Notes: a model not told the origin generated them from the sequence alone. DNA of 64,000 nucleotides from Pecten maximus (GCF_902652985.1 NC_047016.1:24180001-24244000), one strand, 5' to 3'. Counted from the stretch's first letter, positions 42,727-63,838 are shown. Program-made: numbers and translations.

Positions 42727-45700
42727 ATGGCCGAACCGCCAGGTTCAACTGACGAAGTGTGGTCGGATGGAGAGAGTTTGACAAATGTCCCGTTTGTAAA
42801 AGATGTCAAACTCGTGTCCGTTGAACATCCAGCTATTGTTAACAATGTTGATAAGGCATTGGCAACTCTTGGAGGATGTAAAGAATTGTCCAAGGTATCG
42901 CCTCGCAAATAAACCACTAACAACGTTAACGTTAGTAACATGCAATAACCCATTTATCACTTAGCTGGAAAAGTAAATGGCCTAGCTAGTCAAAAATGAG
43001 AAATGCTTTCCCGATGCAACAGTAGTTAATCTACCGCTATGTGGGTTATCGATATAATCATGAGTTATCAGATGGCTGTTTTTTTTCGAGGTTTAAATAC
43101 TAGAGGAAAAAAGAAGCGCAAGTTTATTTTCCCTAGTTATTATTTTACATAATTTTTCATTTTTATGATTATTGCATCATTACTGATGAGATTCTCGATT
43201 AAATCATCATTACTGCATACATTTTTATGAATTTTGTTGTTCTATCACAGAAGGTGTTTGCGTGAATTCTGTTAAAATAAGGGTACCCTTATAATTATGC
43301 CATTTCCTGATCCAAATGAGTATTGTTTGTGCACCTGCCCACCTTTGGCATCAATTAGTTCTCTTTCTCTTTTTAACATTGACCATATCGAGGTGGATAT
43401 GATTTCACTCCTGAATAAGGGCCTGTGTGAGTTGAGCGAAATTATATATAACGTTGAGCGCTTCCTAACCCTCCTGTCTAGCTGCAGTCCTCCCACAAAT
43501 GCTCGATCAGGGACGGCATCTAGACTGTATGGTGGCCAGTCAAGAACAGTAACGTTGTCTAGATCCAGAAAGTCACGACAAACCCTAGCACTAGCAACAT
43601 TGGCCCTCACGTAGTGTGAATTTTCTGACGATCTTACTCCGTAGTAATTCCACATTTCATATAGTAGTGCGCTCTGGCCCTACACCAGACATAGTGTCAG
43701 GGTCAGAGGAAACTTAGCTACACGTTGTCCTGCTGCAATTTCAGGTTATGTTTCTGGATGAGAAGAACATGTAGTTTCAAGACCTAATCCTGATATCTTA
43801 CTGCTTAGTGATTACCATCGATAACCACAAGAGGTGTTTAATTTTTACTCCTTGATCATGAGATATCCCTGTCCATACCATTACAGACCCTCCCCTGCAT
43901 CTGCCGCTTTCAGTTACACAAGCTTCAAAATATCGCTCATCACGACGTCTATAGTCATCCATCTGACCTGTAAAGCTTAAAGTGATACTGGTCAATGAAC
44001 AATAGGTGTGACTGTCTCCAATGGTCAAAACGAAACCAATTAGGTACATGTACAAGCAGCCACTGCATTCAGCAATGGCGCCGCCTCTTTGTAATAGGCG
44101 GCCCAGCATGGGGATCTTTTCGCCTTAAGAGTTAATTGAATTTATACTGCGTGTATAAAAGATCCAAATTAGGAAAACTGACTTGTGTTTCTTTTTTCTG
44201 CAAGTACAGGTCCTTCAGATCAGAGATTAAATCATAAAGTCATATATATGCACAGATTGTAATAGCAAGGACAATGTTCATTGTAAGTGTATTGAAAAAT
44301 ATGCTGCCAGTCGTGAGGTTCAAATGTTAGACCTCTCACTCTCCGAAAAGACATCCTACCACAAGGCTAAAAGGGAAACTCCCACTAGTCTGAGTTAGTC
44401 TGATGACCTACATATACTGCTGCGCCTGGACCTTGTATTAGCAATGTTAACAAAACTACAGAAGTAGCCCAAGTTCCCTCTGGTCCTGACACTATCTGGT
44501 GTAGGGCCAGAGCACTTTATTATATGAAAACATGTAATTCTCCGACTCTTGGTGTTGCTAAAATTTTGGTGCAGACAAATTAAAAGTAAATATGGCATAA
44601 CACCTATTTACAACGTAGAAACAAAGGACATGCATGTCCTACACCTTCATGTAGGATTTCTTAGAATTAAGAATCTGGTAGAATTTGATTAATAATATTT
44701 ACTATTTTGCTTTGGATATTGGTATGTTGAAGGCAATTTCAATTCATTTATTTTATTTGTTCCAACTTTTTTCAGTCCTTTAGCAACAGTAACAAACGGA
44801 TTGCCTTGCGTTGGCGACCACAGGACATCTACTGTAAGTCTGTGTATGGAGAACGATACCCAACCACTAACTTGTTGATGAAGGTGAAGAGAAGATGGAA
44901 GAAAGATAAGCCAGAAGAATCTCAATACCACATTGAGGTCCTCGGGGTTATTGATAACACTTATAAATTCCAAGGTAAGGGTTGTCATCATCTTGGATAT
45001 CAAATCTAAGATGTTTGAAAGAAAATCATTAAAATCATTACAGATTAAACTTCTGTGGGTCCCTGGTTATTATTTTATCAAATAAATTTGTAATTCTTTT
45101 TTTGTCAAATGAAATTTAGAATTCGTTAAAATAGTGATTAGTTATATACACTGAAAATAGTTTGATATTAACTTACAAAACATTATCCAAGAATTGAACT
45201 GAGTGACTATTCATACTAGTTTCTGATAGTTTCTCCTTTCTGTATCCTCACCTACCAAGCCTTGGTAGACTACCAGTATCTGCCAGTGATTCGACAGCCA
45301 GACAACAGTTACACTAGCCTGACTGACAAGCTGGTCCTAAACACGTTGTGTGATCGACGGGAGTTTCTGGACAATGGTTGCCCACTCTTCCTACCACCTA
45401 GCAGTTTCTCTAGGATGGACTATCCAGATAAGAGTTACCTCCTCCGAAAAGACATTGAACACAGACCTGGCTATGTCAACCCTGACCACAACCGTCCTCA
45501 AAACCTCATTGGAACAGGTAATTAAGGTTAAATCTATGCACAGACTAGAATTTATTTACACCAAGACTTCTATCTCATACTAACATTTTAATGAGTACTT
45601 TTCATATGAATTATTTTTCAATGTTGAAATATTTGTGTTGGCATGGGTTTTACTTATGCATTCTGGTGGTATTTAAGTCTAAGGCCCAAGTTAAATTTGT

Positions 45701-48700
45701 GAGCAAAGGGAGACAACTTAACTCAGAAAAATTTTTTTTTGAAAGAAGGTAGAACTTTCCTAAGATATTTAGTTTTTCTAGAAAACACAAGATTCTTACT
45801 GCAGGTACCAAGTACATTAAAAAGAATTAGTGTACACCATTGAATGGACTCCTATTGAAATTTATTACTTTTATATAATTTATTAGAACTTATTACATAA
45901 AAATTGCAAAAACAAAAACAAAACAAAACAAAACAAACCTGGATAACAATCTCTAGTTGTTATTTAAACCATCAGTGTTGTAATTGTAGTATGAGTTTAA
46001 CATGGTATTACTTAGGTCTGTGGAAAGTCATTACATTGATATGTTTTTTTCTACATGTGTGTATAATTATGACTGCTCTATATGAATTAAGGTTTATACA
46101 TGTAAAAGTATAGAGCAATCTTAGAGTAAATCGGTGCATAATTTATGAAATAGAAAATAATTTTTTCATTTCCATTAGATTTTGATAAAATATGTACAAC
46201 ACAACTCGGTTTCCATATTTGTATTATTTTCTGTAAGTTGATGAGGTGAAAAGTTAAGTTGATGCTGAGGTGAGGAGTTAAGTTGATGAGGTGATAAGTT
46301 AAGTTGATGAGGTGAGGAGTTAAGTTGATGAGGTGAGAAGTAAAGCTGAAAAGTGAGGAGCTAAGTTGATGAGATAAGGAGTTGAGTTTATGAGGTGATA
46401 AGTTAAGTTGATGCTGAGGTGAGGAGCTAAGTTGATGAGGTGAGGAGCTAAGTTGATGAGATAAGGAGTTGAGTTTATGAGGTGAAGGATGAAGTTGATG
46501 AGGTGAAGAGTTAAATTGATTAGGTGAGGAGTAAAGTTGAAGGGGTAAGTAGTTTAGTTGATGAGGTGAGAAGTCAAGTTGGGCAAGTTGAGGAGTTAAG
46601 CTGATGAGGTAAGAAGTTAAGTTGATGATGTGAGAAGTTAAGTTGATGAGGTGAGTTAAGCTGATGAGGTGAGGAGTTAAGTTTATGAGATGAGAAGTTA
46701 AGTGAGAAGTTAAGTTGGTGAGGTGAGAAGTTAAGTTGATGAGGTGAGAAGGTAAGTTGATGAGGTGAGAAGTTCATTTGATGAGCTTAAAAGTAATTAG
46801 TATTGTAAAAAAATGATTCACAGTACATAACAGCCGTTATATCAGCAAAACAATGGGAATTATATGTTTTTTTAAAAATTTATTTCCACATTTTTGTTTT
46901 GGCCAAAAAATAGATTATGCCATCATGGGAATTAAGGTTTTCCTTGAGTAGTTTTGTATAACTGATGTCACACTGGAAAAAATTGTATTGCTTAATCTTG
47001 TTTTGTAATACATAGTGCGCCAGAAAAGGACAATTTATACACAGTTCTGTAGTTTTGGAGATCCAGTACCGGACGGTGTATCGGAGAACGTCAAGACTTA
47101 TCTGAGATCCAAGTATAACAATCCAGAGGCTGAACAAAAACTCAAACAGGTACAACAAGATTTCCCTGTGGCATTTTATGAATGGCATAAACCAACAAGA
47201 ACAGACGAGTACCAGAGTTTATTTAATTTTTTAATAGGGGCCACAATAGGTCAGTTGGTTAGAGTGGTGGCCACGTAACCTCAGGTGAAGACAGAGGTGC
47301 TTGGTTCGATGCTTTCTCCCATGTCGGTTTGCGTTTCTCCGGGAGCTGAGAAACGGGCTAGTCTGTGCTGTTGTAGGTGTGTTCTTGGGCAAGACACTTT
47401 ATCCTAATTGAATATGGCAGTTTACTCCTACCAGTTTGAACAAGTTACACCGTATGCTTGTGTATAAACTTTTGCACAGGCTTTCTCTTGATGAAACTTG
47501 AAGTAAATGTCTTTGTAATCTAGATCTGCTCACATTTCCACATTTAAGAAGACTTATTGTTCATCAGTCTTTTCTCGTATCAAAGTTTTTCAGGAGTATA
47601 ACTTTCTTAATATTTCATAAATTGTAGACTTTTCACTCACCAATTGTGTTGATGAGTGCATGTAGTAGTGTCCTCATAAATATTCATATATTGTATGTTT
47701 GTAACCAGTGTATCAAAGAAACCTTTCTTCTTTTCACAAACAATCTCCATGGTCATGTACTGTTACTGAAGTAAGCAGTTAGTGTAATCTAAAGTGGCCT
47801 GGAACTACAGGTATTCCCTAACACGCCTGTAGAAAATGTGGGTAATGAAACTAGTAGAACTCAAATATGTCTGAGCTTTCTGTATAAAACAGACACGATT
47901 ATTTTCTGCTTTAAAGTGGATTTCTGCTTTTTGTAAAATTTGGGGAGGTCCCTTTTTCCTCTCTGTGCAGTCATGTCTGGCAACAAGAAACAACAAATTA
48001 AACATTCTTTTTCATTTACTGAATGTTGTAGCATTTCCTGAAATATATTTTTATGGATCCTGTTTTATGTAGAAATTCTGAAAATTAGGGAGAGTGGTTA
48101 TTTAGTTTTGGACAGACACACCTTAAATCTGCCATACAGGAATATTCTTTTGCCTTTTTCAGCTTTTTGAGGAGCGCCCTGTTTGGTCGAGAATGGCATT
48201 GATTCCACACTTCCCTAAACACAAACAGAAACTGAAGTATCTGCTGCCTCTCACTGGATTCTACTTTTTGAGTGGTCCCTGGAGATGCTTGTGGTGCAAG
48301 TTTGGGTTTGACCCTTTGAAAACCACTGAGTCAAAGATGTTTCAAACAGTGGATTTCAGGAAACGACAAGGTGCGCAGTCTTCATTGTCCTGTGAAAGTT
48401 ATAATCATATAATAAGTTATAAGTAATAGGCTCTATTGAGTAATAGGCTCTGTAGAGTAATTTGGTTTTGTTTGATTTTGTTTAACGTCCTATTAACAGC
48501 CAGGGTCATTTAAGGACGTGCCAGGTTTTGGAGGTGGAGGAAACCGGAGTACCCGGAGAAAAACCACCGGCCTACGGTCAGTACCTGGCAACTGCTCCAC
48601 GTAGGTTTCGAACTCACATTCCAGTGGTGGAGGGCTAGTGCTAAAGTGTCGGGACACCTTAACCACTCAGCCACCGCGACTTCCTGTTGTGTAATTGGCT

Positions 48701-51700
48701 CTGTCCAGTAATAGGCGCTGTCCAACTGTCCATCTGGTCAAATATTGTGACGTCATTCAATCACTCGTCCTTAGCAGGTGGAGCATGCTTCTTCATACTG
48801 CCATGGATTTTCACACCACGAATTGCATGCTTTAGTGACTCAAATATACATGTATATCAGATTAAAAAGTTTCATCTATATGTAGGTTAAAACAAATCCC
48901 CAATAAGAGGTTGGAAAACCATTTGCCATGTAGTAAAAAATTGATATGGAATACACAGTTAACCTTCGGTTAGTTGGAATATGTGGATAGTTCATATACA
49001 CATTTTTTTTCTAGAAAAAACAATGATTTTTTAGCTATAATAGGTCGAACATGGTTGTTTATAACTGACTATTTCTAATAGTTCAAACTTGTCAAATGAA
49101 GAATGTATAAGATTTCATTTCGGCAAACTCCAATGAAAGCTCGCGACAACCGACCAAGTAAAAATGACAAGACTTAAATTTGATCAACTTTTATTTCATT
49201 TATTTATTTAAGGGTTTTACGTCTGCTAAGACAGCCTAACGGCCTTTCAGCTGACGAGAACAGATAGGAAATTGAGTAGAGTGGGTACAATATGATGTAA
49301 GAGGAAAGAGTAGGAAAGAAGAGAGGGGAGTCGTTTGGATAACTTATGGGTAATTTTTGAGACGACTCCCTGAGTCCGAATGAATCCTAACCTGGCACTG
49401 TTTAGTAGCAGCTACGCCAACCCTATCGAAGATGAGTGGAAAAGAGAGAAGACCCTACCCTATAAATTTGTTTTAACAAAGTTTTTGACGTCCGTCTTAA
49501 TACCTGTTAAATAATATTAAAAAACAAAACATTGGCCTAAAAAACCCTATCCTCTGGGGCGGTGTTATCTCACCTACTCTTCAACGAAAGACCACAGAGG
49601 GATCTTTATTGTGCAAGTTGGACATTCTTACACGGACACCGTTTTAAATCCCATCCGACGGACTAGGTGTTAGTGGTTAGTGGTTTTGAAGTGCTGGTGT
49701 CTTATTTTTGGTGACCTCGCTTGTAAGCTTCCTCCGATGTTTCTCTGCCATAATATGTACTGTCCTCTTTACCAAACGTCCATACTTTCCTTATAGCCAC
49801 ACAATTCTGACATTACTAGTCTGTACACATTCCGATGTTTTACTATAATTATAGTTGTGATATGTAGAGTGTGGGTTTAGTACTGTGGAGGGAAAGAGGA
49901 AGTGAGGGATGCAGGGTGATTATGATAAAAAACATGTTATCAGGGTTTGTTGCAGGTCGAATGGTGCTGGGAACAATTTGGTATATGGGTTTTGTGGACA
50001 GGTGGTTGGAGGGTATAGTTAGTGGTAGGGTAGTGAGAAGAAAAGAGTGAGGGCTGGGGCGGGGTCCAATATCCCTGGGGGTTGGTTGGGACGTGTATGT
50101 GTATTTTGTTTGTGGGTGGTGATGGGTTTCTGTTCCTAGAGTGTTTTCCTATTTGTGAATGTTTGTTGTATGTTAGGTTTATGTGATAAGACAGTGCTCA
50201 CTTAGGATGTTATTAAAGTACCCCAACAATGAGGACGCGACTGTAAATTACACACAGGACTTTTGCATCCTACAGTGTTTTTGGCAGTTTTCAATGTTTT
50301 AATTTATGAGATATAGTACAGCAACATCAAATAATATTAGCTTTGGGTATAGTTTAACAAGAAACGGCAAGTTAAGCATAAGAATTCTACTTTCACTTTG
50401 TCACTGCATTCTTGATGGAAGCCGGGATCGACTGCCATGGCAACAATGAAGGCCATGGTTTTAGCAAATTATTAAACATACAAACTTGTACATATAACTT
50501 AAAATGTTCCATATAATACAGTATGTCTTTGAAAATTATTTGCAAATAATACATTTAACTGATTATGCTTTGTTACGTTCGTGTAGTGATGTTTGTTTGT
50601 TTCTATGCCACCTTTCTACACTAAAAACACAGAAGAGTTCCACTATCAGGACATGAATATTAATATCAATCGTAGTTTTTCCAAAAGTGCAACCTTGTAT
50701 CAAACTTTTAAAAGATATGAAAAGAGACTTTATGGATAAGAAATTAGCTCATTGATGTAGATTATGATGTGCACCTGAATGGTTTTCGTGAAAAATAGGG
50801 GAAATGTTTGATTATAAAGCCAAAAATGCCATAGTTGAGCCTTTCCCCGACAATAAATCAACATTTTTTAAAGGAATCGTGGGCCTTTCCCCAACAAAAA
50901 ATTGACATTTTTTGAAGGGAATTGTTAAAATCAATCAGATGCATAGGAGTTTTCAGATGCATATTGATACACCCTTTCCATTGATGCAAGAAAAAAACCA
51001 TATTAATTAGGAATGCTTTTATTTCAGGTTCAGTTGGAGAAAGAGTTGGCATCAAATTGAAGAGGAAAGAGAACCTTCTACAGTACCAGGCCTTAAGGAG
51101 GAATGTTGCCAGTGACACTGTTATTAACATCCGGGATATCGTCATGGAAGAGGAGGAATCTGTGAAGCAGCCCAAATCATCAAAGGAAGCAGATACAGAA
51201 ACACTCACCAAAGAAGTTTGTACATCCATTACTTTTGTAAAATGGAAAAAAAATACTGTCTTAACTTAATTAGATGGTGGTTCAAATCCCGCTTCTTCCT
51301 TTGTCTGTCCATATTTAAACTTCTTTTCATCACTTTTTTCCTCAGGGGTACTCAATTGATCTATTTTTCAATTTCATATGCAGGATCTCCTGTTGTGGCT
51401 AGTTGTACATATTAAATCCTGAGACTGATAGGAAAAATAATATTGAGGACAGGCAGCCATCTTGGATATCAAAATAAATTGTTGTCTCCATTTGTCTAAA
51501 CGTACTAGTGGGGTGACACCTAAAGGAGTGTCACAGAAAGAATGAAGTGTAGTTAGGGAAGATAACTCTGGATGAGCACGAAAGACAGAAAAAAAAAAAA
51601 TGCTGAGGGTGATACAGAAATGTCCGTCTTGAGTTCAGAGGTTCCATGCACGAGTCCTGGTTTATATCAAAATCGTTCAATGTCAATATTTCGACCAATA

Positions 51701-54700
51701 AGAAGCATCAGCGTGGTTATATGGCAATAAATCCCATGTGGTTGAATTCGAATTCCGCTATTTACAAAAATATACCATTTTGCATCCAAATCCATTGTCT
51801 AAACTTCGACCAATCGGAAGCCTTGGCAATGATACCGATACAATGGAATTTGCAGTCCCCTAATACCAATATATACCATATACCAATGGTAATCGAAAAC
51901 AAAGAATATCTAAATTTTCACCAGGCAGAGGCAAATAAGTCTGCGGCGGCCATCTTGGCTGACCGATCGGAAAATAAAAGATCAGTTGCAAACCCCATGA
52001 CCTTGAAGAACATTTGTGTCATTTTTTTAAGTGGGACACTAAATAGATTATTGGTTATCTTATAACACTGGTAACCCCAAAAACCTTTATTTCCTTTCCT
52101 TTAGCATAAATACCTTCACTTGCTCTTAATTTCCTCACTTTCACTTAATTTTCTCACCTGCACTTAATTTATTCGCGCGACATTTAAAACTCTCAAATAC
52201 GTTTAAATATTAATACTGGCAAGAGGAAATTGAAGGTTTAGGGGTTACCACTGTAATAATTTTCATAATTCTTCAGTTTTCTGGAATATGACACATTAAT
52301 TGATTATGAGACATCAATTGGCATCTATGCAAGCATACGTTAGAGTCTCTCATGTGTTGTTGTTCAGTGAGGTAGTCACCCCACTACTATAAGGAGACCC
52401 AGCCTCAAAACGATCCTGATTGCAATATATACACGTGGTGATAAAACAACCAAACAATCAACCCTAAGTTCATCTTAGTAACAGATGTACTCGCGGTATT
52501 CTAATCGATAAATAATTACATATACGATCAAAGATAAAAACAAATGTCATGCATATCATTATGATGTCAAAATCAGGGCTTCTAGGGACCACAGAACAAA
52601 ATCAAAAATAGATTGTGGGTTTTTCCCATTTGGGCAGAAGATTTAATAGGAAGGTGAATGCATCCGGGCCTACTGATTGGATATTAAGTTGGCTGGTGAC
52701 GAAACATCCGCCACCTCTCGATAAAATACGACCCTTTTTCAAAACCCTATTGTGGCCGTTCTATGAAAGATATAGAAAAACTAAAGATACGCTTTTCTTC
52801 AGAACTATCTCTTCTTGTTATGTTTGGAGTTTCAAATTTTTGGATTGAATCGCTGATTTTTAAGGACCGGTTAAACAGAAGCTACCGGTCAAAGTGACGA
52901 TTTTGGCATGTTTGACCCAAAATATCTCATAAATACGAATTTCCACAGGGATACCAGATACATCCAGACCTAGATCGAGCCGAGTTTTACAATGGTTCAA
53001 AACCCTATCAAAATTGTATGTGTCATTTTTTCCACCCCCAAATCGCTACAATAGCCGGCAAAAATCGCGAATTAGCTCATACTATCATTACGTTCCGTAA
53101 GGAACGATAACGAGTTATCGTCCCTTACTACACTTCATTCTTTACAAGTTTGAATAAATTCAAAAATAAATTAAAAATAAATTTTTAAATTTTTAAAATA
53201 AATTCAAATAAATCTGTGTTTAACGTTGGCGTTGACTGGTGTGCATTTAACACTGGTCTTGACTGGAAAGCATTTAAAAAATTATAAATACATTTGAAAT
53301 AAATTTTAAAAAATATGTAAATCGATTCAAATAAATCTGAATTTAATACTGGCGTTGACTGGTGTGCGTTTAACACTGGCGTTGACCGGTATACATTAAA
53401 CACTAGCATTGACCGGTATACATTAAACACTAGCGTTGACCGGTATACATATAACACTAGCGTTGACCGGTATACATTTAATACTAGCGTTGACCGGTAT
53501 ACATTAAACACTAGCGTTGACCGGTATACATTAAACACTAGCGTTGACCGGTATACATATAACACTAGCGTTGACCGGTATACATTTAATACTAGCGTTG
53601 ACCGGTATACATTTAACATTACCGTTGACTGGTATACATTTAACACTACCGTTGACCGGTATACATTTAGCATTACCGTTGACCGGTATACATTTAACAT
53701 TACCGTTGACTGGTATACATATAACATTACCGTTGACCGGTATACATTTAACACTACCGTTGACCGGTATACATTTAACACTACCGTTGACCGGTATACA
53801 TTTAACACTACCGTTGACCGGTATACATTTAACACTACCGTTGACCGGTAAACATTTAACACCACCGTTGACCGGTAAGTGTTAAATGGACACCGGTCAA
53901 CGCCTGTGTTAAATGGACACTAGTCAACGCCTGTGTTAAATGTATACCGGTCAACGCTAGTATTAAATGTATACCGGTCAACGGTAGTGTTAAATGTATA
54001 CCGGTCAACGCTAGTGTTTAATGTATACCGGTCAATGCTAGTATTAAATGTGTACCGGTCAACGCTAGTGTTTAATGTATACCGGTCAACGCTAGTATTA
54101 AATGTATACCGGTCAACGCTAGTGTTAAATGTATACCGATCAACGCTAGTGTTTAATGTATACCGGTCAACGCTAGTATTAAATGTATACCGGTCAACGG
54201 TAGTGTTAAATGTATACCGGTCAACGCTAGCGTTAAATGTATACCGGTCAACGCTAGTATTAAATGTATACCGGTCAACGGTAGTGTTAATTGTATACCG
54301 GTCAACGCCAGCGTTAAATGTATACCGGTCAACGCTAGTGTTTAATGTATACCGGTCAACGCTAGTATTAAATGTGTATCGGTCAACGCTAGTGTTTAAT
54401 GTATACCGGTCAACGCTAGTATTAAATGTATACCGGTCAACGCTAGTGTTAAATGTATACTGGTCAACGCTAGCGTTAAATGTATACCGGTCAACGCCAG
54501 TGTAAATTGTTTACTGGTCAACGCCAATGTTAAATACATATCCCGTTTTTGCCACTCACTGCACTTAAGCTGGTTCGGAATTTCAATTTCCGGATTTCTT
54601 GAAATTTTGCTTAACAACTCATCATACATTAAACATTAGCATTGACCGGTATACATTAAACACTAGCGTTGACCGGTATACATATAACACTAGCGTTGAC

Positions 54701-57700
54701 CGGTATACATTTAATACTAGCGTTGACCGGTATACATTAAACACTAGCGTTGACCGGTATACATTAAACACTAGCGTTGACCGGTATACATATAACACTA
54801 GCGTTGACCGGTATACATTTAATACTAGCGTTGACCGGTATACATTTAACATTACGGTTCCGGAATTTCAATTTCCGGAGTTATCGTCCCTTACTACACT
54901 TCATTCTTAAAAAATTGACATTTTTTGAAGGGAATTGTTAAAATCAATCAGATGCATAGGAGTTTTCAGATGCATATTGATACACCCTTTCCATTGATGC
55001 AAGAAAAAAACCATATTAATTAGGAATGCTTTTATTTCAGGTTCAGTTGGAGAAAGAGTTGGCATCAAATTGAAGAGGAAAGAGAACCTTCTACAGTACC
55101 AGGCCTTAAGGAGGAATGTTGCCAGTGACACTGTTATTAACATCCGGGATATCGTCATGGAAGAGGAGGAATCTGTGAAGCAGCCCAAATCATCAAAGGA
55201 AGCAGATACAGAAACACTCACCAAAGAAGTTTGTACATCCATTACTTTTGTAAAATGGAAAAAAAATACTGTCTTAACTTAATTAGATGGTGGTTCAAAT
55301 CCCGCTTCTTCCTTTGTCTGTCCATATTTAAACTTCTTTTCATCACTTTTTTCCTCAGGGGTACTCAATTGATCTATTTTTCAATTTCATATGCAGGATC
55401 TCCTGTTGTGGCCAGTTGTACATATTAAATCCTGAGACTGATAGGAAAAATAATATTGAGGACAGGCAGCCATCTTGGATATCAAAATAAATTGTTGTCT
55501 CCATTTGTCTAAACGTATTGGATAGATCTTTCCCTGATTCCATGACTGTGTAGATTTACCTTGTTCCCTAGTTAGTCAGGGCGATTTTATAGTGTGTAAG
55601 TAATTATTTGTCATCATACGGGTTGTTTCCTGTTGTTTTGTAGGAGGAGCAGTATATCTACACACCGACCAGCATTCCACCCTGTCGACAGATGTTTTAC
55701 CAGCTCTGTGACATCCGAGCTCCCAGGATACAACACATTATACACAAGAATGACGGAAAGGTAAACAATGTGCTATTGGCGAATTGGTATGCCCCCGGCA
55801 ATTGCAAGAGCGATTTATAAAAGTTGATATAACTTGTTTCACAATTGTTTTAAAATAAATTTAAAAGAAAATCTAATTTAGTGTTAGGATGATATCCATT
55901 GCAAGTACTGAATTAATCAGTTGACAGGCTCATCCAAAACTCAGTGTCATTTTCAGTGCAAAATACTGTAGACTGCAAAAAATAGTTTGTTTTAGTACTT
56001 TCAAATTGTTAAATATATATGTAGTTATCTCCCCTAGACCATAAACTTTAAGTCAGAATTGAATGATAGAAATACAAAGTTTGTCACAAGACCATAGGTA
56101 AATGAGGTAATTTGTTACTATTAATATCTTTTAAGTGCCATAAAGAGTTTCTTTGTTAGAGGAAACTTTTCCTGTGTACCAAACTTTCACAGTTTTTGCT
56201 CATTAGTAGATATCCATACAGCGAAAAACAACTGGCTTATGATTAAAATAATCTGTAAATATTCATTACTGGTCATGAAAGAATGTATCATTTTCAAAGT
56301 TGATACGTAAAAGTAAAACAGTGAGAAAAAGCATGTTTCCATATCCTGATAGTGATTATCCATATCCTGATAGTGATTATCCATATCCTGCTAGTGATTA
56401 TAGATATCCTGAATGTGATTATAGATATCCTGATATTGATTATAGATATCCTGATATTGATTATAGATATCTTGATTGTGATTATAGATATCATGATAGT
56501 GATTATACATATATCCTGATAGTGATTATAGATATCCTGATTCCCTTTTTGGAAGGAGAACAGATTTTGCATAAATGGTGATGAGGCTAGAGGGGCAGGG
56601 CCCGATAAGGGCTGCTCTGCAGATGAGAATTGTACCTGCAGCCCCCATCGCAACCTTCTTCTTTCTAATGTCTCTCTTGACACTGCCTCACATTTGGCCT
56701 TTAGTTGAGCGTTTGCCCCTGTGAGGAAGGCTTTGGGTTATGTCCCTTGGCAGAGGCATACCAGAGTCTATGAAAATGGTAGTTACTACTCCTGCTTAGA
56801 GCTCAGACTTATGGGAGTGTGAGAACTGATTCACCCATTGTCAGTATAATGTGACCGGGTGGGGTGTCCTGCTGTTTTTTTTTTTAGCAGTATGCTATCA
56901 GTGAGGTAGCACTTTTTAAGTCGGCATCAGTTCCGTACTATCACAAAAAGGACAAACACAAACATACCACATCCTTTCAAAACCCACACTTACACTAGGC
57001 CTCACGCATGCATCTCACACACAGAAGAGGCCGTCCTTAAATGACTTTAGCTGTTGTGGTATGTTGGACAACACTAAACCAATCAAACCGGATATAGAGG
57101 AAATAAAAGTAAGTCTTTTAAATCGCCACTAGTCATAAAGTACTGAATTGATTGGACCAAATTTGGTCAGAAGCTTCCTTTGTGAAAGAAGAAAAAAAAC
57201 ATGCATAAATGGTGACTATGCACCCCAATGGTCCAGAGGGGCGGGGTCCAATAGGGGAAATAGAAGTAAATCCATGAAATCACTATTTGTCATAATGGAC
57301 ATAATAGATTTGATCCATATTTGGTCGGAAGCACCCAGACTTGGGTGTAGTGGAACTATTTTGAAGAGTCTGACCCCCAGGGGCCTGAGGGGAGGAGCCA
57401 ATAGGGCAGATTTTGCTAATTATTCTAAATCACTGCAATATCCAGGTGAGCGAGACAGGTCCCCTTGTTTATATATATGCTTTGATTTGTAATTTTTACC
57501 TTAAGAGTTGACTATGATAACACTGTATCTATATTGTATGTAAAGGATTTCGTTTTCTACACCATTAGACTTAATACAAGTTTTTCTATAGTGTGACTAG
57601 ATTCTAATGTAATAAACAGTAAAGCCCAACTCCTGTCAGTACATCATTGGTGTCCTCACTGGCTCCCAGTACATCATTGGTGTCCTCACTGGCTCCCAGT

Positions 57701-60700
57701 ACATCATTGGTGTCCTCACTGGCTCCCAGTACATCATTGGTGTCCTCACTGGCTCCCAGTACATCATTGGTGTCCTCACTGGCTCCCAGTACAGCATTGG
57801 TGTCCTCACTGGCTCCCAGTACAGCATTGGTGTCCTCACTGGCTCCCAGTACAGCATTGGTGTCCTCACTGGCTCCAAGTACAGCAGTGGTGTCCTCACT
57901 GGCTCCCAGTACATCATTGGTGTCCTCACTGGCTCCCAGTACATCATTGGTGTCCTCACTAGCTCCCAGGATCAAACCATCATAAAAACTACAAATGTTG
58001 TAAATCATTTTCCCCTGTTTTGTTAACATTTACAATTCTGCGGTTTTATTCCAGTGATAGTGTCTGATGTCCAGACATAACATAAAGGTTTTATCAATCA
58101 TCTGTCTCCTTAATGCTCTTTAATGAATGGTTTTACATCAACATAAAGGTTTTATCAATTATCTGTCTCCTTAATGCTCTTTAATTAATGGTTTTACATA
58201 GACATGATTACAGTAATTTCACACTACATTAACACTATTATAAATAAAATAGTAAAATGATGTCTACTGTGGGAACACTTCTCACTCTGTATTATCACCT
58301 TGTTGACTTTATTTTGTCCGACTGGTTGTTGGATATTTCAAAGGATTTTTATATATTTTTTTTTCATTAAATCATACTATTTGTGATCTATGAATTTTCT
58401 TTGTGTCAGTATTTTGCTTTATTTTACTCCCTTTTTTCCCAATCTTAAACTTAAATCACATCTGTGACTAGACTGTAGTCATGTAAACGAATAACAAAAA
58501 ATTTACAGCCTAAGGGATTAAAAATGATATGATGTTTGTGGTAAACACTGTGTTTAAAAGTTTGTGTGAAGAATGTTATTCAAGAAATATGTTTGGGAGT
58601 GTACATGTGTGACCAAACAATATGAAATATTCACATTGATTTCTATGTATCATATACAGTATTAAAAAGTATAGTAAAGAAAACCAACGTGCCAAATTGT
58701 TAACAAATTTACTTTTGTAGGATGTAATTTAGATAGTTGTGTACAATCCAGTCACATGGCTGTTGGTTGTTATGAGATTGAGAAGTGGCAGTATCACAAG
58801 ATGATGACTTTGACAAAATATCGGTCAGAAATCAGTGAAGCAAGGACAGGCAGACATAAATTACGAGGAAAGGGAAAGTTTTTAATAGCAACCAACAGTA
58901 ACAATATGTACACTGTATTAGCATGATGGTTGCTATAAAATGAGAGGAGTATACTGGTCGGAATTTTTTTTTTCACATGACAAATTATGGGAAACACTGT
59001 AGACACTTTGTGAAAAATTAATATATATATATAAACACAAAGACTGTTAAAGTGCAAATATGCTTTCATCAGGTTTGCGTATCACAGTGCTGAATTCATT
59101 TATTTCATTTAAAACTTTTTTTTTATGTTTTAAGTGAATAATTTTAGATCTAAAATCTTTAGAATACTTAAGTTTTGTTCATGTTTAAATATTGCATTAG
59201 TTTTGATTGCACTAATTACAACATACCGTGCTGATGACATCATGATAGGTACCTTAATATTCATCAGTAGTCAGATCAGTAGATTGTTAAAATCTTATCG
59301 TTATAGTTATACACTGTAACCTGAGTACACCAGTATAGATATGCATGTATACACCATAAAATAGGATCTATCTTAAATCAATCTTCAAGTAAAATTACTC
59401 ACTAAAAATATTAATTTGATTGTAAACAAACACTAATTGTCGGACAAAAAAAAATTGTGATTTTTTTTCACATTTTACCATTTTGTGGACTTAATTGTTT
59501 TTGCACCAAAACTCATTTTAAAGTTTTGGGGGTAAGTCCAAAAAAATACACCTATCACCCTTCTAATTTGGTTATACATTCATTAAAAATCCAGGAGTGA
59601 TGCTGTGGCAAATCATGCAGAAAAAAATTGGCATTTTGGCATTTTGCTATTTAGTGGACTTACTTTTTTTGACACAAAAACTCACTTGAAAGATTTTGGG
59701 GGTTAGTTTTGAAAAGCTTGTAAGTCCACAACCTTCTTATTTGGTTTATACATCCATTAGAGGTCTAGGAGCGATATTATGTGACTTACAATTTCAAAAT
59801 GACATGCTTATACATAGATAAAAAATGAATGCATTGTGTGATTGATGCCGCCGGTGAGCTTTTGCAATCATTGATTGCACTTGTTTCCCTTATTTTAAAG
59901 CAGTTTATATGAAAATAGATAATGAATGGTTTGAAAAATCAAAAAAAAATTCGTGTCCTCATCTGTTTTTTACCTTATCAAATGATCAAAAAACAAATTA
60001 ACACTCTCCCTAATCTGTTTTTAGAAAAAACAGCCGGAGAACCAAGTACATAGTTGTAATTAATTTTCAGATTCACACAGACAACAAGCTTAGGCCAAAT
60101 CACTCTAGCACCAACAGATTCACACTGATAATTAATACTAAATTAAAAGAACAGCAATATTTTGACCTTGACAATAAGCCAATATTAATCGGGAAACATT
60201 TAGTTTAAAATATGTTAATTGTTGTGGTGACTTGATATGTTTATAGCAGGACATGTGTCGTGTTATACAGTAAGGATGTAATTTGAAAATATACCCGTAT
60301 GTATCAGGAACTAGGTTGTTGCATTTATTTTTGAGTATTCAGTAGTTTTTTGGCTGAATCATCAACATATTCCTGAATAGATATTTTAATGACATTCCAG
60401 GGTTGTAAACATTCATTTCATGGATGATAAATTTATGAGCTTGTTTACAAATATTTAGTCGCTGTACACATTTCACACGTGGAATTTTCTGTAAATGCTA
60501 CCTGTATGGTTTGAGTGTAGCTGCAACTCTATGTTCAGCAAGACAGAAATTTAATGTGGTTTCATTCAAACACAGTTTACTGGAAGATAATCAAAGGAAA
60601 TTCTGTCACATGTGATTACATCCTGGTATGGTGTGCCCAGCTCTTCATTACAGGGCCTGTGTATACTTAAATGGGATGTAAAGTTTCATCACTGAAAACC

Positions 60701-62941
60701 ACATATAGGTACCCTTTACAGTGAAATAGATACATATATGTATAGCCAAGCAGACCAGTGTCAACTTACGCATGAAAAACATCAGAATTCAACTGATAAA
60801 TAAAGTAGAAACCATGAAGACACCCAAAACCACACTCCAACTATAATCATATTTCAGATTAGCCTCCTACACACGGTCTCTATCTCCACCTCGACCTATT
60901 AGCTAACGTGATTGCACGGTATGAATTAGGCTTTGTATGGAGCTTGCCTTCATTATGATTTTTTATTTATACAGTGTACATGTGATTCATTTAAAGTATC
61001 TATACCGCACCTCAGAATTTGTTATCAAGATTTTGAGAGTTTTGTATCGGTATCAAGTTGGATTGTACGTAATATATTCTATTGTTATAAAATGTGATAT
61101 GCTGTTGACCTTCAGCGTGTCATTATAAAGCTGCTTATTGTATATTCATGTAGATTTCCATGTGTTAGTTGATCATAAGCATTGTATTGATTCAACACCT
61201 AAAATGTTATGGATTTTTTTTGTTACCAAACATTGAATAAGAAAATTCCTTGTTAGGCAATTTATCTACAAGATAGAGCTGATTGTCTGATCTTTCTATA
61301 CATAAACGGGGTTAAAATTTCTTATCACTTCAACTTTTTTTTTATTTTGAAAACTCAACATTCTGAAAACTGATACTTAGTTTCAATAGCTATGTCAGGC
61401 TCAGAATGACACGTGAAACTTAAATGTTATGCAGTGTAAAGAAAATAGTCCAGAGGTCTGCTATTGGTTACACTAGGCAGTAGCATTACTGAGCTTTAAA
61501 AGGTGTAGAGTTACATTGGGATACTTAAAAATTCAAAGCCTTAATTTGCATGTTTTTCAAATTTAAAAATTAAATACACCACATGCTCTACATAATTTTC
61601 TTTCCTGTTCTTAATGATATCTTCTCTCTTAAACATTAAAGATTATTGGCATAATAATGAAGCATTCCTTTAATTTCTGCTCACAAAAGGAAGGGGGTGG
61701 GAAGGGTGGGTCCATCTTCCTTCTCACAAAAGGGTGGAGTTGGGAAGGGATGGGTTCATCTCCCTGCTTACAAAAGAAAGGGGAAGGGAAAGGGGGGGGG
61801 GGGGCTCCACCTTCCTGCTCACAAAAGAGTGAGGGGGGTGGGGAGGACGAGTGGGTCCATCTTCTTGCTTACAAAAGGAGGGGGATGGAAAGGGGTGGGT
61901 CCATCTTCCTGCTTACAGAAGGGGGGGGGGGGGGGGGGAAGGGGGGGGGGTCCATCTTCCTGCTTACAGAAGGAGGGGGGGGGGGGGGGCGTCTTCCTGC
62001 TAAAAAAAGGGGATGGGAATGGGTGGGTCCATCTTCCTGCTAACAAAAAGAGGGGGGTGGAAAGGGGTAGGTCCATCTTCCTGCCTACAAAAGGAGGGGG
62101 TGAGAAGGGATAGATGATCTTACTGGTCACAAAAGAGTTAAGGTAAGAAGGAGTAGGTTAATCTTCCTGCTCACAAAAGGGTGGAGTTGGGATGGGATGA
62201 GTCCATCCTCCTTCTCACAAAAGGAGGGGGAAGTGGAGGGGTTGGTCTATCTTTCAGCTCACAAAAGGTGGAGTTGGGATGAGTTCATCTTCCGGCTCAC
62301 AAAAGGGTGGAGTGGGAAGGGACGGATTCATTTTCCTGCTCACAAAAGGGTGTGGAAAGGAAGGGATGAGTCCATCCTCCTTCTCACAAAAGGAGGAGAA
62401 AGTGGAGGGGTTGGTCTATCTTTCAGCTCACAAAAGGTGGAGTTGGGATGAGTTCATCTTCCGGCTCACAAAAGGGTGGAGTGGGAAGGGACGGATTCAT
62501 TTTCCTGCTCACAAAAGAAGGGGGAAGGGGAGGGTTGTGTCCACCTTCCTGGTCAAAAAAGGACGGGGTGGGAAGGGATGGGTTCATCTTCCTGCTCACA
62601 ACAGAGTAACGGTGGGAAGGGATGGGTTCATCTTCCTGCTCACAAAAGGAGGGGGAAGGGAAGGGGTGGATCCACCTTCCTGCTCACAAAAGGATGGGAA
62701 AGGTTGGGTCCATCTTCCTGCTTACAAATTAGAGTGGGGGTGGGAAGGGGTGGGTTCATCTTTGGCAAATGTTTTGACCACTTATATGTATATTTACAGG
62801 AAAAAACATGCACAGAAAAAGATGGATGGTGTGAGCCGATGGCAATCGACAAATGTCGAGACCTCATGTCATATTACACAATGAAGATATTGAGTAACGA
62901 AGAGGAACAGCAGGTTTCAATGGTAGACTACATAGCAAGGC
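42727..62941 (+). CDS. GTF3C5: General transcription factor IIIC subunit 5 (TFIIIC63/Tfc1/tau95), 3'-incomplete
   Basis: Exons 42727-42894, 44776-44974, 45260-45517, 47016-47149, 48163-48370, [51028-51215 or its duplicate 55041-55228], 55644-55760 and 62800-62941, GT-AG with consistent phases (~471 codons in window). Motifs VEHPAIVNNVDKALATLGG, LRWRPQDIYC, DYQYLP, FLPPSSFSRMDYP, LFEERPVWSR, YFLSGPWRCLWCKFGFDP, FQTVDFR, PPCRQMFYQLCDI and CTEKDGW. Confidence 0.93.
43270..44110 (-). mobile_element. Degraded Tc1-family (DD34E) transposase relic in GTF3C5 intron 1
   Basis: YRRRDERYFEACVTE..GGSVMVWTGIS and ARVCRDFL...VLDWPPYSLD..(frameshift)..QLDRRVR. Confidence 0.82.
46236..46785. repeat. Degenerate ~21-bp tandem repeat
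   Basis: Unit approximately aagttgatgaggtgagaagtt. Confidence 0.85.
47237..47410 (+). mobile_element. tRNA-derived SINE, CORE-like
   Basis: A-box-like taggtcagttggttagag, B-box-like ggttcgatgc, and CORE-like gtgttcttgggcaagacactttatcct. Confidence 0.6.
48462..48682 (-). mobile_element. Near full-length tRNA-derived V-domain SINE
   Basis: On the minus strand: A-box gtggctgagtggttaagg, B-box gagttcgaaacc, V-domain-like ggtttttctccgggtactccggtttcctccac, and an (aaaac)n-type tail. Three copies occur in the window. Confidence 0.82.
49190..49670 (-). mobile_element. Probable SINE/retroposon relic (Deu/Nin-like segment)
   Basis: Simple-repeat tail at ~49190 and the segment ggggatctttattgtgca...cacggacaccgttttaaatcccatccgacggact, which resembles invertebrate SINE central domains (from memory, not searched). 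Confidence 0.35.
50896..51504 (+). repeat. 609-bp direct duplication, copy 1 (contains GTF3C5 exon 6)
   Basis: Matches 54909-55517 at offset 4013. Only one substitution was seen (ggctagtt vs ggccagtt). Confidence 0.95.
52066..52253. mobile_element. Small MITE nested in the Helitron-like element
   Basis: Imperfect ~30-bp TIRs: cactggtaaccccaaaaacctttatttcct and aggaaattgaaggtttaggggttaccactg. Confidence 0.6.
53340..54853. repeat. 27-bp minisatellite in three blocks of alternating orientation
   Basis: Unit aacactagcgttgaccggtatacattt is forward at ~53340-53878, inverted at ~53880-54540 and forward again at ~54622-54853. Confidence 0.95.
54909..55517 (+). repeat. 609-bp direct duplication, copy 2 (contains second copy of GTF3C5 exon 6)
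   Basis: Matches 50896-51504. The ORF track shows identical peptides at 51057/55070 and 51218/55231. Confidence 0.95.
56335..56540. repeat. 21-bp tandem repeat
   Basis: Unit approximately gattatagatatcctgatagt. Confidence 0.88.
56690..57090 (+). mobile_element. tRNA-derived Meta-domain-like SINE
   Basis: Degenerate tRNA head, then aaaatggtagttactactcctgcttag...gtcagtataatgtgaccgggtgg. The tail gtccttaaatgac...ctgtt...aaaccaatcaaacc resembles the V-SINE tail. A related fragment lies at ~11870-11962 on the minus strand. Confidence 0.6.
57637..57969. repeat. 30-bp minisatellite x11
   Basis: Unit cagtacatcattggtgtcctcactggctcc. Confidence 0.95.
61675..62762. repeat. G-rich degenerate ~41-bp tandem repeat
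   Basis: Recurrent ccatcttcctgctcacaaaag + G-tracts + gggaaggg..gggt. Confidence 0.88.
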
Positions 62942-63838
62942 GTAAGTTTGTTTCATTTACGCAAGAATACACAATACAGTTTGTACTGTGAAACCTGTGG
63001 TATCAGAAACTTCAAGGATATGTAGGGCTTATATTGAATATATCAGATTATGTCAGAATATACAGGTTCTTACATGGAATATATATTGTGTTTTACAACA
63101 CAGGTTTTTTTTATAAACCGTTTCAGGATGTGTTGAAACACGCAGGTTTTTACTGTATATTTATGGTAGGAAAGATCAATTTCTTAATCAGCACAAGGAA
63201 GACATGCCATATAGAAGTAGATCAATATAATCAGTTAATCTGATTTTTTTTTCTTACAAGGAAAGATTGATTTTATCCAGTGTCCATTCTATCAAGTCAT
63301 GGGGAAAATCTTTTTGAGTATCCAATAAAAGAAAAGAAAAGCCCTGTGACTGGAATCATCATCTTAAACAGTGGAAACACACAACACAATTGTACCTATA
63401 GAGGCCAATCAGTTCCGCCTCTCAATATTGATGCAATGTTGCACCTCAATGGCTTTGAAGTCACCACAAAAACTTCACTTAAATTATGTTTCAAAATTGT
63501 CCAGGTTTCATCATGTAGTTGTAGCATTACACAGCCAGTGACCGTGTAATACATATCAAATCAACATTCAGGCGAAAGTATTCATACCTAAACCAGTTAG
63601 ACAAGTACCATATACGGAAGCCTCTCATGAGTCATTACATATTCCATTTCAACAAATTATGCATAAATCCTTAGTCATCTAGTATACTATATCCTGCCTG
63701 TATGTTCTATCAGCGGTATTATCTGTTGATAGGAGAGGATCCTATCAGGAGAAAATTGAAGTAAAAAAAAAAATGTTTACTGAACAAATTCATTTTTTCC
63801 CCAAGTCTTTATGAGCTTGACCTTGTTGTACTTGATGA

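What the first reader, a model, noticed from the sequence alone, without database searches (positions are those of the whole stretch)
50896..55517. Helitron/Helentron-like insertion flanked by a 609-bp direct duplication that copies a whole GTF3C5 coding exon
Seen: the structure is X-D-E-D-Y. D (50896-51504 = 54909-55517, one substitution seen) contains exon 6 with its acceptor and donor. E (3404 bp) abuts both copies exactly at its termini. The left junction is cgtA|CTAG plus hairpin (minus-strand 3' end CTAG|T; the empty site in copy 2 reads cgtA|Ttgg). The right junction is the 31-bp terminal inverted repeat joined to an A6 run (T6 on the element strand). Known: Helitrons end in hairpin+CTRR and insert at A|T, Helentrons have asymmetric subTIRs and prefer T-runs, and neither normally makes target duplications. 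Inference: a very recent rolling-circle insertion whose two ends were resolved 609 bp apart, giving a giant TSD. This would be a route to tandem exon duplication in an essential gene, and the element combines both terminal types.
Basis: partly seen in the sequence, partly recalled or inferred. Interest (0 to 1): 0.78.

Follow-up and report, generated by a model that had tools for sequence, protein, structure and literature searches.

The report
Scallop transposon flanked by duplicated exon
A common rolling-circle-type mobile element sits in an intron of the king scallop GTF3C5 gene between two near-identical 609-base copies of host DNA that each hold one exon. The duplication may be a real by-product of transposition, or an assembly error made by joining two parental haplotypes, and I could not tell which.

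Summary
Window 50896-51504 and 54909-55517 are 609-bp direct copies with one mismatch. They abut a 3404-bp insert exactly at its two ends. Each copy carries a 188-nt exon of a Tau95/GTF3C5 gene.

The insert is a non-autonomous Helentron/Helitron2-type element (HINE). It has a 31-nt 5' TIR, a 29/31 matching 3' subTIR, then a 7-bp hairpin and a CTAG end. The family is young and abundant in the genome, which is Pecten maximus xPecMax1.1 by exact size. The 3' end motif has 302 exact copies.

The family norm is a TA on both flanks (26/28 and 29/30). Three other complete copies have no flanking duplication. Here the 3' junction is canonical. The 5' junction is not: the exact TIR end is joined to an A6 run inside an older high-copy repeat.

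I see two readings.
- About 0.5: a false heterotype duplication. A contig of the insertion haplotype was joined to a contig of the empty haplotype, and the gap was closed with reads.
- About 0.4: a real aberrant transposition or template-switch event.

The "giant TSD made at insertion" version is disfavoured. The scan also noted this same stretch from another window (s1-783150).

The parts
50896..51504 (+). D1, first 609-bp copy (continuous with upstream X)
   Evidence: X|D1 lies inside an older dispersed repeat R whose other copies run uninterrupted across this point.
54909..55517 (+). D2, second 609-bp copy (continuous with downstream Y); one mismatch at 55413
   Evidence: A ~155-bp repeat family aligns continuously across D2|Y (window 55361-55574).
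51028..51215 (+). 188-nt GTF3C5 coding exon, copy 1 (acceptor ...tttcag|G, donor AAG|gtttgt)
   Evidence: frame 2 is open and the phases fit the neighbouring exons.
55041..55228 (+). 188-nt exon, copy 2 (identical)
48127..48370 (+). preceding exon (Tau95 HTH domain), ends in phase 1, donor GT at 48371
   Evidence: Pfam PF09734 E=2.7e-24; human GTF3C5 269-342; sequence
55644..55760 (+). next exon (EEQYIYTP...RQMFYQLCD...), starts in phase 0; its end is approximate
   Evidence: human GTF3C5 406-447, E=5.7e-10
51505..54908 (-). E, a composite non-autonomous Helentron/Helitron2-type element (element strand = window minus)
51505..51537 (-). 3' terminus: CTAG end, 8 nt, then hairpin (7-bp stem 51513-51519/51528-51534, 8-nt loop)
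   Evidence: fold -6.8 kcal/mol, z = -2.65; conserved in 302 exact copies
51538..51568 (+). 3' subterminal inverted repeat, 29/31 match to the 5' TIR
53112..53142 (-). inner 5' TIR; 51505-53142 is the canonical 1638-bp family unit, followed by TA
53341..54535 (.). 27-bp satellite in two inverted arrays (forward 53341-53877, reverse 53878-54535), forming a ~535-bp-arm imperfect palindrome
   Evidence: the same layout occurs in three other composites
54624..54855 (+). 232-bp recent internal copy of 53391-53622 (1 mismatch)
54856..54879 (+). 24-mer copied from the segment at 54574-54598; its join to the TIR was found in no other copy (top 40 genome hits, 34 sampled TIRs)
54878..54908 (-). outer 5' TIR (31/31 identical to the inner one); it ends exactly at junction J2 with D2 and has no TA
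55516..55517 (.). TA of the target site (empty-site form ACG-TA-TTGG; fits the family flank consensus TA-Y-T)
50300..50991 (.). older dispersed repeat R that contains the X|D1 point, so D2's left edge falls inside a high-copy repeat
   Evidence: 763 candidates; copies span query 1-692

Best explanation
Shown: E is an ordinary member (a structurally unique composite variant) of a young, abundant non-autonomous Helentron/Helitron2-type family of Pecten maximus. Its 3' end is inserted canonically at a TA in the intron downstream of a 188-nt GTF3C5 exon. Inferred, and most likely in my view: the second 609-bp copy is not in the animal's chromosome. I read it as a false 'heterotype' duplication made during assembly. 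The sequenced scallop would be heterozygous for the insertion. A contig of the filled haplotype (X-D-E...) ended in this repeat-rich, palindrome-bearing element. A contig of the empty haplotype (D-Y) started 609 bp upstream of the insertion site, inside the high-copy repeat R. Scaffolding placed the two contigs end to end, and the gap was closed with long reads of the filled haplotype. Those reads run ...TIR-TA-TTGG. An aligner places their TA-TTGG on the TA-TTGG at the end of D2, so the filled-in sequence stops exactly at the last base of the TIR and D2 stays in place. That path gives X-D-E-D-Y with the observed joint.
For: The family norm is TA on both flanks (26/28 left, 29/30 right). There is no flanking duplication in 3 of 3 other complete copies. 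Under this reading the copy is canonical as well. J2 is the exact TIR end without TA, and D2 ends in the target TA, which is what the alignment logic predicts. D2's left edge lies inside a repeat with 763 candidate copies, next to a homopolymer run, a typical place for a contig to end. Including both 188-nt exons gives a frameshift and a stop after 10 codons in a single-copy gene that I take to be essential. The assembly is wtdbg2 on PacBio CLR reads of an animal with 1.71% heterozygosity. Gaps were filled by Arrow after Scaff10X and Hi-C scaffolding, and I found no haplotig-purging step in the passages I read (PMC7191990). False heterotype duplications, including false exon gains and 'incorrect gap filling', are documented for such pipelines (PMC9516828). 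The nearest family copy is 98% identical to the E core while D1/D2 are 99.84% identical. That fits an older insertion plus two alleles of D.
Against: D1 and D2 differ at only 1 of 609 positions. For two random haplotypes at about 1.7% heterozygosity I estimate P(<=1 difference) at about 0.17-0.2 (my calculation, geometric model). The window has no N and the joint is clean. The assembly holds no haplotig with either the canonical filled allele or the empty allele. A second very recent local copy (232 bp, 1 mismatch) lies 55 bp from J2, which hints at a real local template-switching event. No read-level evidence was obtained.
Confidence: 0.5

Rival explanations
1. The duplication is real and transposase-made. 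A canonical insertion already existed, heterozygous with an empty homolog. In a later, aberrant round the RepHel enzyme cut at the exact 5' end of the element, and that end was joined to a T-run (element strand ...TTTTTT|) 609 bp beyond the element's 3' end. This could happen by one-ended 5' strand transfer into the homolog, resolved by homology. It could also happen by read-through of the 3' hairpin terminator to a cryptic stop, giving an [E+D] circle whose head-to-tail joint is J2 and which then recombined through D into the empty allele. Either route yields X-D-E-D-Y, with J1 inherited and J2 new.
For: J2 is the exact last base of the TIR, as expected for an enzyme-made end. The 3' junction is canonical. 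Helitron transposases bypass the 3' hairpin in about 12% of events, transduce flanking DNA and form circles with joined ends (PMC4778049). Head-to-tail arrays of this family exist, for example 4.63-kb spacing at C8:31613593-31629255 and element-TA-element joins. The genome holds many Helitron-like Rep matches inside 2800-3200-aa open frames, so the machinery may be active. D1/D2 differ by 1/609 while the E core is 2% from its nearest relative, which fits a two-step history. DDE transposons give the same X-D-TE-D-Y layout by alternative transposition (PMC3744419).
Against: The T-run is not this family's target: TA follows the TIR in 29 of 30 other copies. It needs an empty homolog or sister as partner, plus a rare event. 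None of 3 other complete copies shows a flanking duplication. The product breaks the reading frame of an essential gene if both exons are spliced in. No reads confirm that J2 exists.
Confidence: 0.25
2. The duplication is real and comes from replication-based serial template switching (FoSTeS/MMBIR-like), triggered by the ~535-bp-arm inverted satellite inside the element or by a nick at its 5' end. The right end of E is a chain of short, very recent local copies: segment A, 3 nt (ATC), 232 bp from the forward array, a 24-mer from segment A, the 31-nt TIR, and finally 609 bp of D copied from the homolog or sister.
For: 54624-54855 equals 53391-53622 with 1 mismatch, while other satellite registers differ at 16-20 positions. 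The 24-mer+TIR join was found in no other copy. Junctions have 0-3 nt of microhomology or filler. All sources lie within 4 kb and in direct orientation. A long imperfect palindrome lies next to them.
Against: The TIR piece starts and ends exactly at the TIR boundaries, and D2 ends exactly at the insertion site. These are coincidences for random switching unless a transposase nick and an empty-allele template are added. The internal patchwork could equally have arisen earlier in a master copy. Satellite regions of CLR assemblies are error-prone.
Confidence: 0.15
3. One reading: a single de novo rolling-circle insertion whose 3' end was joined at the TA and whose 5' end was joined 609 bp away, giving a giant target-site duplication at the moment of insertion.
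For: Both element ends are intact to the base, and D flanks them directly.
Against: On one strand the two joins would make a circle, not a duplication, so two chromatids are needed (my reasoning). The E core is only 98% identical to its nearest relative while D1/D2 are 99.84% identical. P(<=1 difference in 609 bp at 2% divergence) is about 7e-5 if that relative were the parent, although the parent may be missing from the assembly. The 5' target is non-canonical.
Confidence: 0.05

Closest known systems
HINEs: non-autonomous Helentrons (DINE-1 of Drosophila, HINE-Mo of mites, Cg_HINE of the Pacific oyster; PMC4067079, PMC7492417)
   Same: 5' (sub)terminal inverted repeat paired with a 3' subterminal repeat, followed by a short palindrome near the 3' end. 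A short IR complementary to the 5' TIR in the core. Central satellite-like tandem repeats in the composite form. High copy number. No coding capacity.
   Different: The TIR is 31 nt (11-15 nt in the described families). Flanks are TA on both sides rather than TT/T-rich. The 3' end is CTAG as in canonical Helitrons. The satellite sits between two 5' TIRs and forms inverted arrays.
Canonical Helitrons, e.g. Helraiser (PMC4778049)
   Same: Hairpin 8 nt from a 3' CTRR (CTAG) end. Host A before the 5' end and host T after the 3' end in all 58 sampled flanks. Tandem head-to-tail arrays. 3' read-through/transduction is a documented route to carrying flanking host DNA.
   Different: No 5' TC. Long asymmetric TIRs. 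No flanking duplication is known for Helitrons.
False heterotype duplications and false exon gains in long-read assemblies (PMC9516828)
   Same: Two near-identical adjacent copies in a heterozygous region, an exon gained inside a gene, a repeat-rich context, and a pipeline with read-based gap filling.
   Different: No N gap remains between the copies.
Tandem direct duplications with a transposon at the joint, from alternative transposition of maize Ac (PMC3744419)
   Same: The X-D-TE-D-Y layout, with one old and one new TE junction.
   Different: DDE cut-and-paste chemistry with 8-bp TSDs at the new site and two TE copies involved. Here the element is an HUH/rolling-circle type and the new joint is at a non-canonical site.

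Membership tests
Helentron/Helitron2 non-autonomous element (HINE) | 5' (sub)TIR complementary to a 3' subterminal repeat | tested here: met
   31-nt TIR at 53112-53142 and 54878-54908; 29/31 match at 51538-51568; 0 expected by chance
Helentron/Helitron2 non-autonomous element (HINE) | short palindrome/stem-loop between the 3' subTIR and the 3' end | tested here: met
   7-bp stem, 8-nt loop, 3 nt after the subTIR and 8 nt before the end; conserved in 302 exact copies
Helentron/Helitron2 non-autonomous element (HINE) | central tandem repeats in some members | tested here: met
   27-bp satellite arrays in this copy and in three other composites
Helentron/Helitron2 non-autonomous element (HINE) | insertion into TT/T-rich sites without target-site duplication | tested here: inconclusive
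   Flanks are TA|element|TA (26/28 and 29/30), not TT. No empty site of a canonical copy could be recovered, so TA duplication and A^T insertion cannot be told apart. The window's own empty site is ACG-TA-TTGG.
Helentron/Helitron2 non-autonomous element (HINE) | autonomous partner encoding Rep-helicase(-endonuclease) with the same termini | tested here: inconclusive
   92 PF14214 matches, many in 2800-3200-aa open frames. None lies within 15 kb of the 100 listed 3' ends on C1-C11. Letters could no longer be fetched.
Canonical Helitron | 5' TC ... 3' CTRR with a hairpin about 10 nt from the 3' end | tested here: not met
   3' CTAG and the hairpin are met. The 5' end reads AAGAATG (or TAAAGAATG), not TC.
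Canonical Helitron | host A 5' and host T 3' of the element, no TSD | tested here: inconclusive
   A...T holds in 58/58 sampled flanks. Absence of a TSD is not testable without empty sites.
False heterotype duplication (assembly error) | haploid read depth on both copies, haplotype-specific k-mers, discordant or absent spanning reads, gap or depth-gap between the copies | not testable with these tools
All runs are held as contigs only. No N in the window.
GTF3C5 / TFIIIC subunit 5 (host gene) | Tau95_N triple barrel and Tau95 HTH domains | tested here: met
   PF17682 E=9.7e-14 at 44731-45006; PF09734 E=2.7e-24 at 48127-48423; matches to human GTF3C5 chains

The most novel reading that the evidence does not exclude
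The X-D-E-D-Y structure is real: a Helentron-type rolling-circle element, through an enzyme-made 5' end joined off-site (read-through circle, one-ended transfer, or nick-triggered template switching with the empty homolog), produced a 609-bp tandem duplication of its 3' flank that includes a whole coding exon. This would be a caught-in-the-act case of rolling-circle transposons making tandem exon duplications in situ, not only capturing fragments.
Probability: 0.4. Interest if true: 0.75.

Novelty: new member of a known kind. Interest (0 to 1): 0.35.

Why it matters
If the duplication is real, it documents a mechanism not described for Helitron/Helentron elements: a long flanking duplication with the element at the joint. 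That would link rolling-circle transposition directly to tandem exon duplication, and to a likely hypomorphic or recessive-lethal allele of an essential Pol III factor in a species known for high genetic load. If it is an artefact, it is a useful warning. In polished, gap-closed long-read assemblies, a heterozygous transposon insertion can leave a seamless false exon duplication whose joint coincides with the transposon's last base and so mimics a giant target-site duplication. Either way, the element family is characterised here: 31-nt TIR, CTAG end, TA flanks, and satellite-bearing composites with two 5' ends.

Tried and rejected
- **Read-level test.** The look-up of sequencing runs listed 24 runs; 20 hold at least part of the stretch, and all are kept as contigs. 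Queries stopped at 53142 or started at 54536 or beyond. My own offline scripts read the whole window file: searches covered those places unmasked (one search used the window as a BLAST subject), and only the self-BLAST masked them.
- **Joint-specific ORF.** I looked for J2 in independent assemblies through an ORF whose stop codon is created by the joint (window 54910-55242, minus strand). There was no exact record and no word-search hit. The control ORF across the ancestral X|D1 point is also absent, so this route says nothing.
- **More family copies.** Only 3 other copies could therefore be checked on both flanks.
- **Empty sites of canonical copies.** BLAST of 58 flanks against all held loci found only nested or tandem family members and paralogous filled sites. 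The TSD question stays open.
- **Autonomous partner.** Rep ORFs exist, but none is near a listed 3' end.
- **Considered and rejected.** Insertion into the joint of a pre-existing tandem duplication needs a hit at 1 position in about 600 and predicts TA after the TIR. Unequal crossing-over between two independent insertions would need a second insertion at a non-TA site. A PacBio missed-adapter palindrome does not fit, because the satellite arms are only 90% complementary and the same layout occurs in three other loci.
- **Spliced protein.** I did not build a joined spliced GTF3C5 protein. Exons were searched one by one by reference.
Full report
**Observation**

The two 609-bp stretches 50896-51504 (D1) and 54909-55517 (D2) are identical except for 51400 T / 55413 C. 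Identity ends abruptly on both sides. Between them lies E, 51505-54908 (3404 bp). No other long near-identical non-satellite duplication exists in the window. D occurs only at these two places in the assembly.

The junctions read as follows:
- X|D1: ...CCCCAAC|AAAAAATTG
- D1|E (J1): ...ACGTA|CTAGTGGG
- E|D2 (J2): ...CACTTCATTCTT|AAAAAATTG
- D2|Y: ...ACGTA|TTGG

Two older repeats show which joints are ancestral. A dispersed repeat R (window 50300-50991, 763 candidates) runs uninterrupted across the X|D1 point in its other copies. A ~155-bp repeat aligns continuously across D2|Y. So X-D1 and D2-Y are ancestral continuity, and J1 and J2 are the two new joints. D2's left edge falls in the middle of R.

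**Host gene**

The plus strand carries a TFIIIC subunit 5 (GTF3C5, Tau95) gene.
- Pfam Tau95_N matches at 44731-45006 and Tau95 HTH at 48127-48423.
- The exon at 48127-48370 aligns to human GTF3C5 residues 269-342.
- The exon starting at 55644 aligns to residues 406-447.
- The upstream exon ends at 48370 in phase 1, with donor GT at 48371.
- The 188-nt exon 51028-51215 has a tttcag|G acceptor and an AAG|gtttgt donor and is open in the frame that needs two leading bases.
- The downstream exon starts in phase 0.

Exactly one copy of the 188-nt exon keeps the frame. With both copies included, the second is read as VQLEKELASN-stop. The exon's peptide has no PDB homolog. Its coding status rests on position (it fills the 63-residue gap between the two aligned human segments), splice signals and phase.

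**The element**

On the window's minus strand E reads: 5' TIR (31 nt, AAGAATG...AACTC), body, 3' subTIR (29/31), TCT, hairpin (7-bp stem, 8-nt loop), CCCACTAG-3'. This is the architecture described for Helentrons and their non-autonomous HINE/DINE-1 derivatives (PMC4067079; PMC7492417), with the CTAG end of canonical Helitrons.

The family is abundant in the same genome:
- 644 candidates for the 3' end and 2641 for the core.
- 302 exact copies of a 24-mer spanning the hairpin/subTIR, against 0 for the control.
- The best core matches are 98% identical.

The canonical unit is about 1636 bp, which corresponds to 51505-53142 here.

E is a composite. The unit is followed by TA, an AT-rich stretch, a 27-bp satellite in a forward and then a reverse array (a ~535-bp-arm imperfect palindrome), and a second, identical 5' TIR. 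Three other loci have the same kind of composite. In those, the reverse array is followed by about 1.1 kb plus the last 450 bp of the core before the outer TIR, and the outer TIR is followed by TA.

Head-to-tail joins (element-TA-element) and a 4.63-kb-spaced tandem array occur elsewhere, as expected for rolling-circle elements. The genome has 92 Helitron-like Rep matches, many inside 2800-3200-aa open frames. I could not link any of them to these termini.

**What is normal for the family, and what is not normal here**

In 28 distinct left flanks the element is preceded by TA in 26 (A in 28). In 30 right flanks the TIR is followed by TA in 29, then Y (29/30) and T (19/30).

The window's site ACG-TA-TTGG fits this consensus, and J1 is canonical. 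J2 is not: the TIR is followed directly by AAAAAA. Three other copies for which I held both flanks have no flanking duplication.

I could not decide whether TA is duplicated or the element inserts at A^T without duplication, because no empty site of a canonical copy was recovered.

**A further peculiarity near J2**

All 34 other sampled 5' TIRs, including the outer TIRs of other composites, are preceded by the canonical core tail. The window's outer TIR alone is preceded by a 24-mer that is a copy of a piece 280 bp upstream. The genome search found no other copy with this join.

Just before the 24-mer, 54624-54855 is a copy of 53391-53622 with one mismatch, while other satellite registers differ at 16-20 positions.

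The right end of E is therefore a chain of recent local copies: segment A, ATC, 232 bp, 24-mer, TIR, then D2.

**Identity of the assembly**

The genome has 918,306,378 bases in 3983 records with 19 large ones. These are exactly the figures published for Pecten maximus xPecMax1.1 (PMC7191990).

**Explanations**

*(a) Assembly artefact, about 0.5.*
- The animal is heterozygous for a canonical insertion.
- A filled-haplotype contig ends in E.
- An empty-haplotype contig begins inside repeat R, 609 bp upstream of the site.
- Scaffolding abuts the two contigs, and reads of the filled haplotype close the gap.
- Those reads end ...TIR-TA-TTGG, and D2 ends ...TA followed by TTGG. The aligner therefore anchors TA-TTGG at the end of D2, and the inserted consensus stops at the last TIR base.

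This reproduces every detail: the exact TIR end, the missing TA, the edge in a high-copy repeat, the intact X-D1 and D2-Y continuity, and a frame-breaking exon copy in an essential gene. It also makes this copy canonical like its relatives. Such false heterotype duplications, false exon gains and incorrect gap fills are documented (PMC9516828).

Four points weigh against it.
- D1 and D2 differ at only 1 of 609 positions. I estimate P(<=1 difference) at about 0.17-0.2 for two haplotypes at theta of about 8-10 per 609 bp.
- No gap remains.
- The assembly holds no haplotig of either allele.
- A second recent local copy lies next to J2.

*(b) Real, transposase-made, about 0.25.* After a canonical insertion, the exact 5' end was joined to a T-run 609 bp beyond the 3' end. 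Two routes are possible: one-ended transfer into the empty homolog, or read-through of the hairpin terminator giving an [E+D] circle whose head-to-tail joint is J2, followed by recombination through D into the empty allele. Helraiser shows terminator bypass, transduction and circles (PMC4778049). Ac alternative transposition gives the same layout for a DDE element (PMC3744419).

*(c) Real, serial template switching near the palindromic satellite, about 0.15.* The chain of local copies and the 0-3-nt junctions suggest this.

The core is 2% from its nearest relative while D1/D2 differ by 0.16%.

**What could not be done**

I then worked beside those places in all search tools. Only my offline scripts read the window file. 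Of these, searches covered those places unmasked, and only the self-BLAST masked them.

A look-up of a J2-specific ORF found nothing, but neither did the control ORF, so that test is void.

**Verdict**

The element is a known kind (Helentron/Helitron2-type HINE) with some family-specific traits: a 31-nt TIR, a CTAG end, TA flanks, and two-headed satellite composites.

The giant-TSD interpretation is not established and is disfavoured in its single-step form. Whether the 609-bp exon-bearing duplication exists in the animal is an open question, and a simple long-read alignment would settle it.

Two earlier AI notes from the scan touch on this. One flags the same duplicated 188-nt exon (s1-783150). 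The other classifies abundant king-scallop elements as Helitron2/Helentron (s1-787187). Both agree with what I tested here.

Noticed in passing
window 54624-54855 vs 53391-53622: 232-bp recent internal duplication inside the element's satellite (1 mismatch; other registers 16-20 mismatches). It is followed by a 24-mer copied from 54574-54598 and then the TIR. No other copy with this arrangement was found (top 40 genome hits, 34 sampled TIRs).
   Followed up: yes
window 53341-54535: 27-bp satellite in a forward array of ~20 units directly abutting a reverse array of ~24 units (arms ~535 nt, ~90% complementary). The same inverted layout occurs in composites on C4, C13 and C8.
   Followed up: partly
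window 50300-50991: Older dispersed repeat R (763 first-look candidates, 75-89% identity) with a 44-bp internal tandem duplication in this copy. D starts inside it.
   Followed up: partly
window 55361-55574: One monomer-like stretch of a ~155-bp repeat that forms tandem arrays elsewhere (e.g. C7:18996664-18997341, C1:38363462-38364914, C3135).
   Followed up: no
G000:C8:31613593-31629255: Five same-strand copies of the element's 3' end spaced 4677, 4629, 4631 and 1702 bp apart: a head-to-tail array of composite units.
   Followed up: no
G000, e.g. C16:2786527, C17:18567700, C6:31999867, C14:6891821: Helitron-like Rep domains inside uninterrupted 2800-3200-aa open frames, suggesting intact autonomous rolling-circle elements in this genome.
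   Followed up: no
window 56341-56541, 57616-58023, 61633-62988: Tandem repeats downstream of the finding: a 21-bp array; a 30-bp array open in several frames; and a long G-rich repeat region that translates to reiterated KGWSWEG-like units.
   Followed up: no
window 23980-25605: 542-codon open frame on the plus strand. Another note of the scan (s1-783140) reads it as a cGAS-like Mab-21 protein. Not examined here.
   Followed up: no
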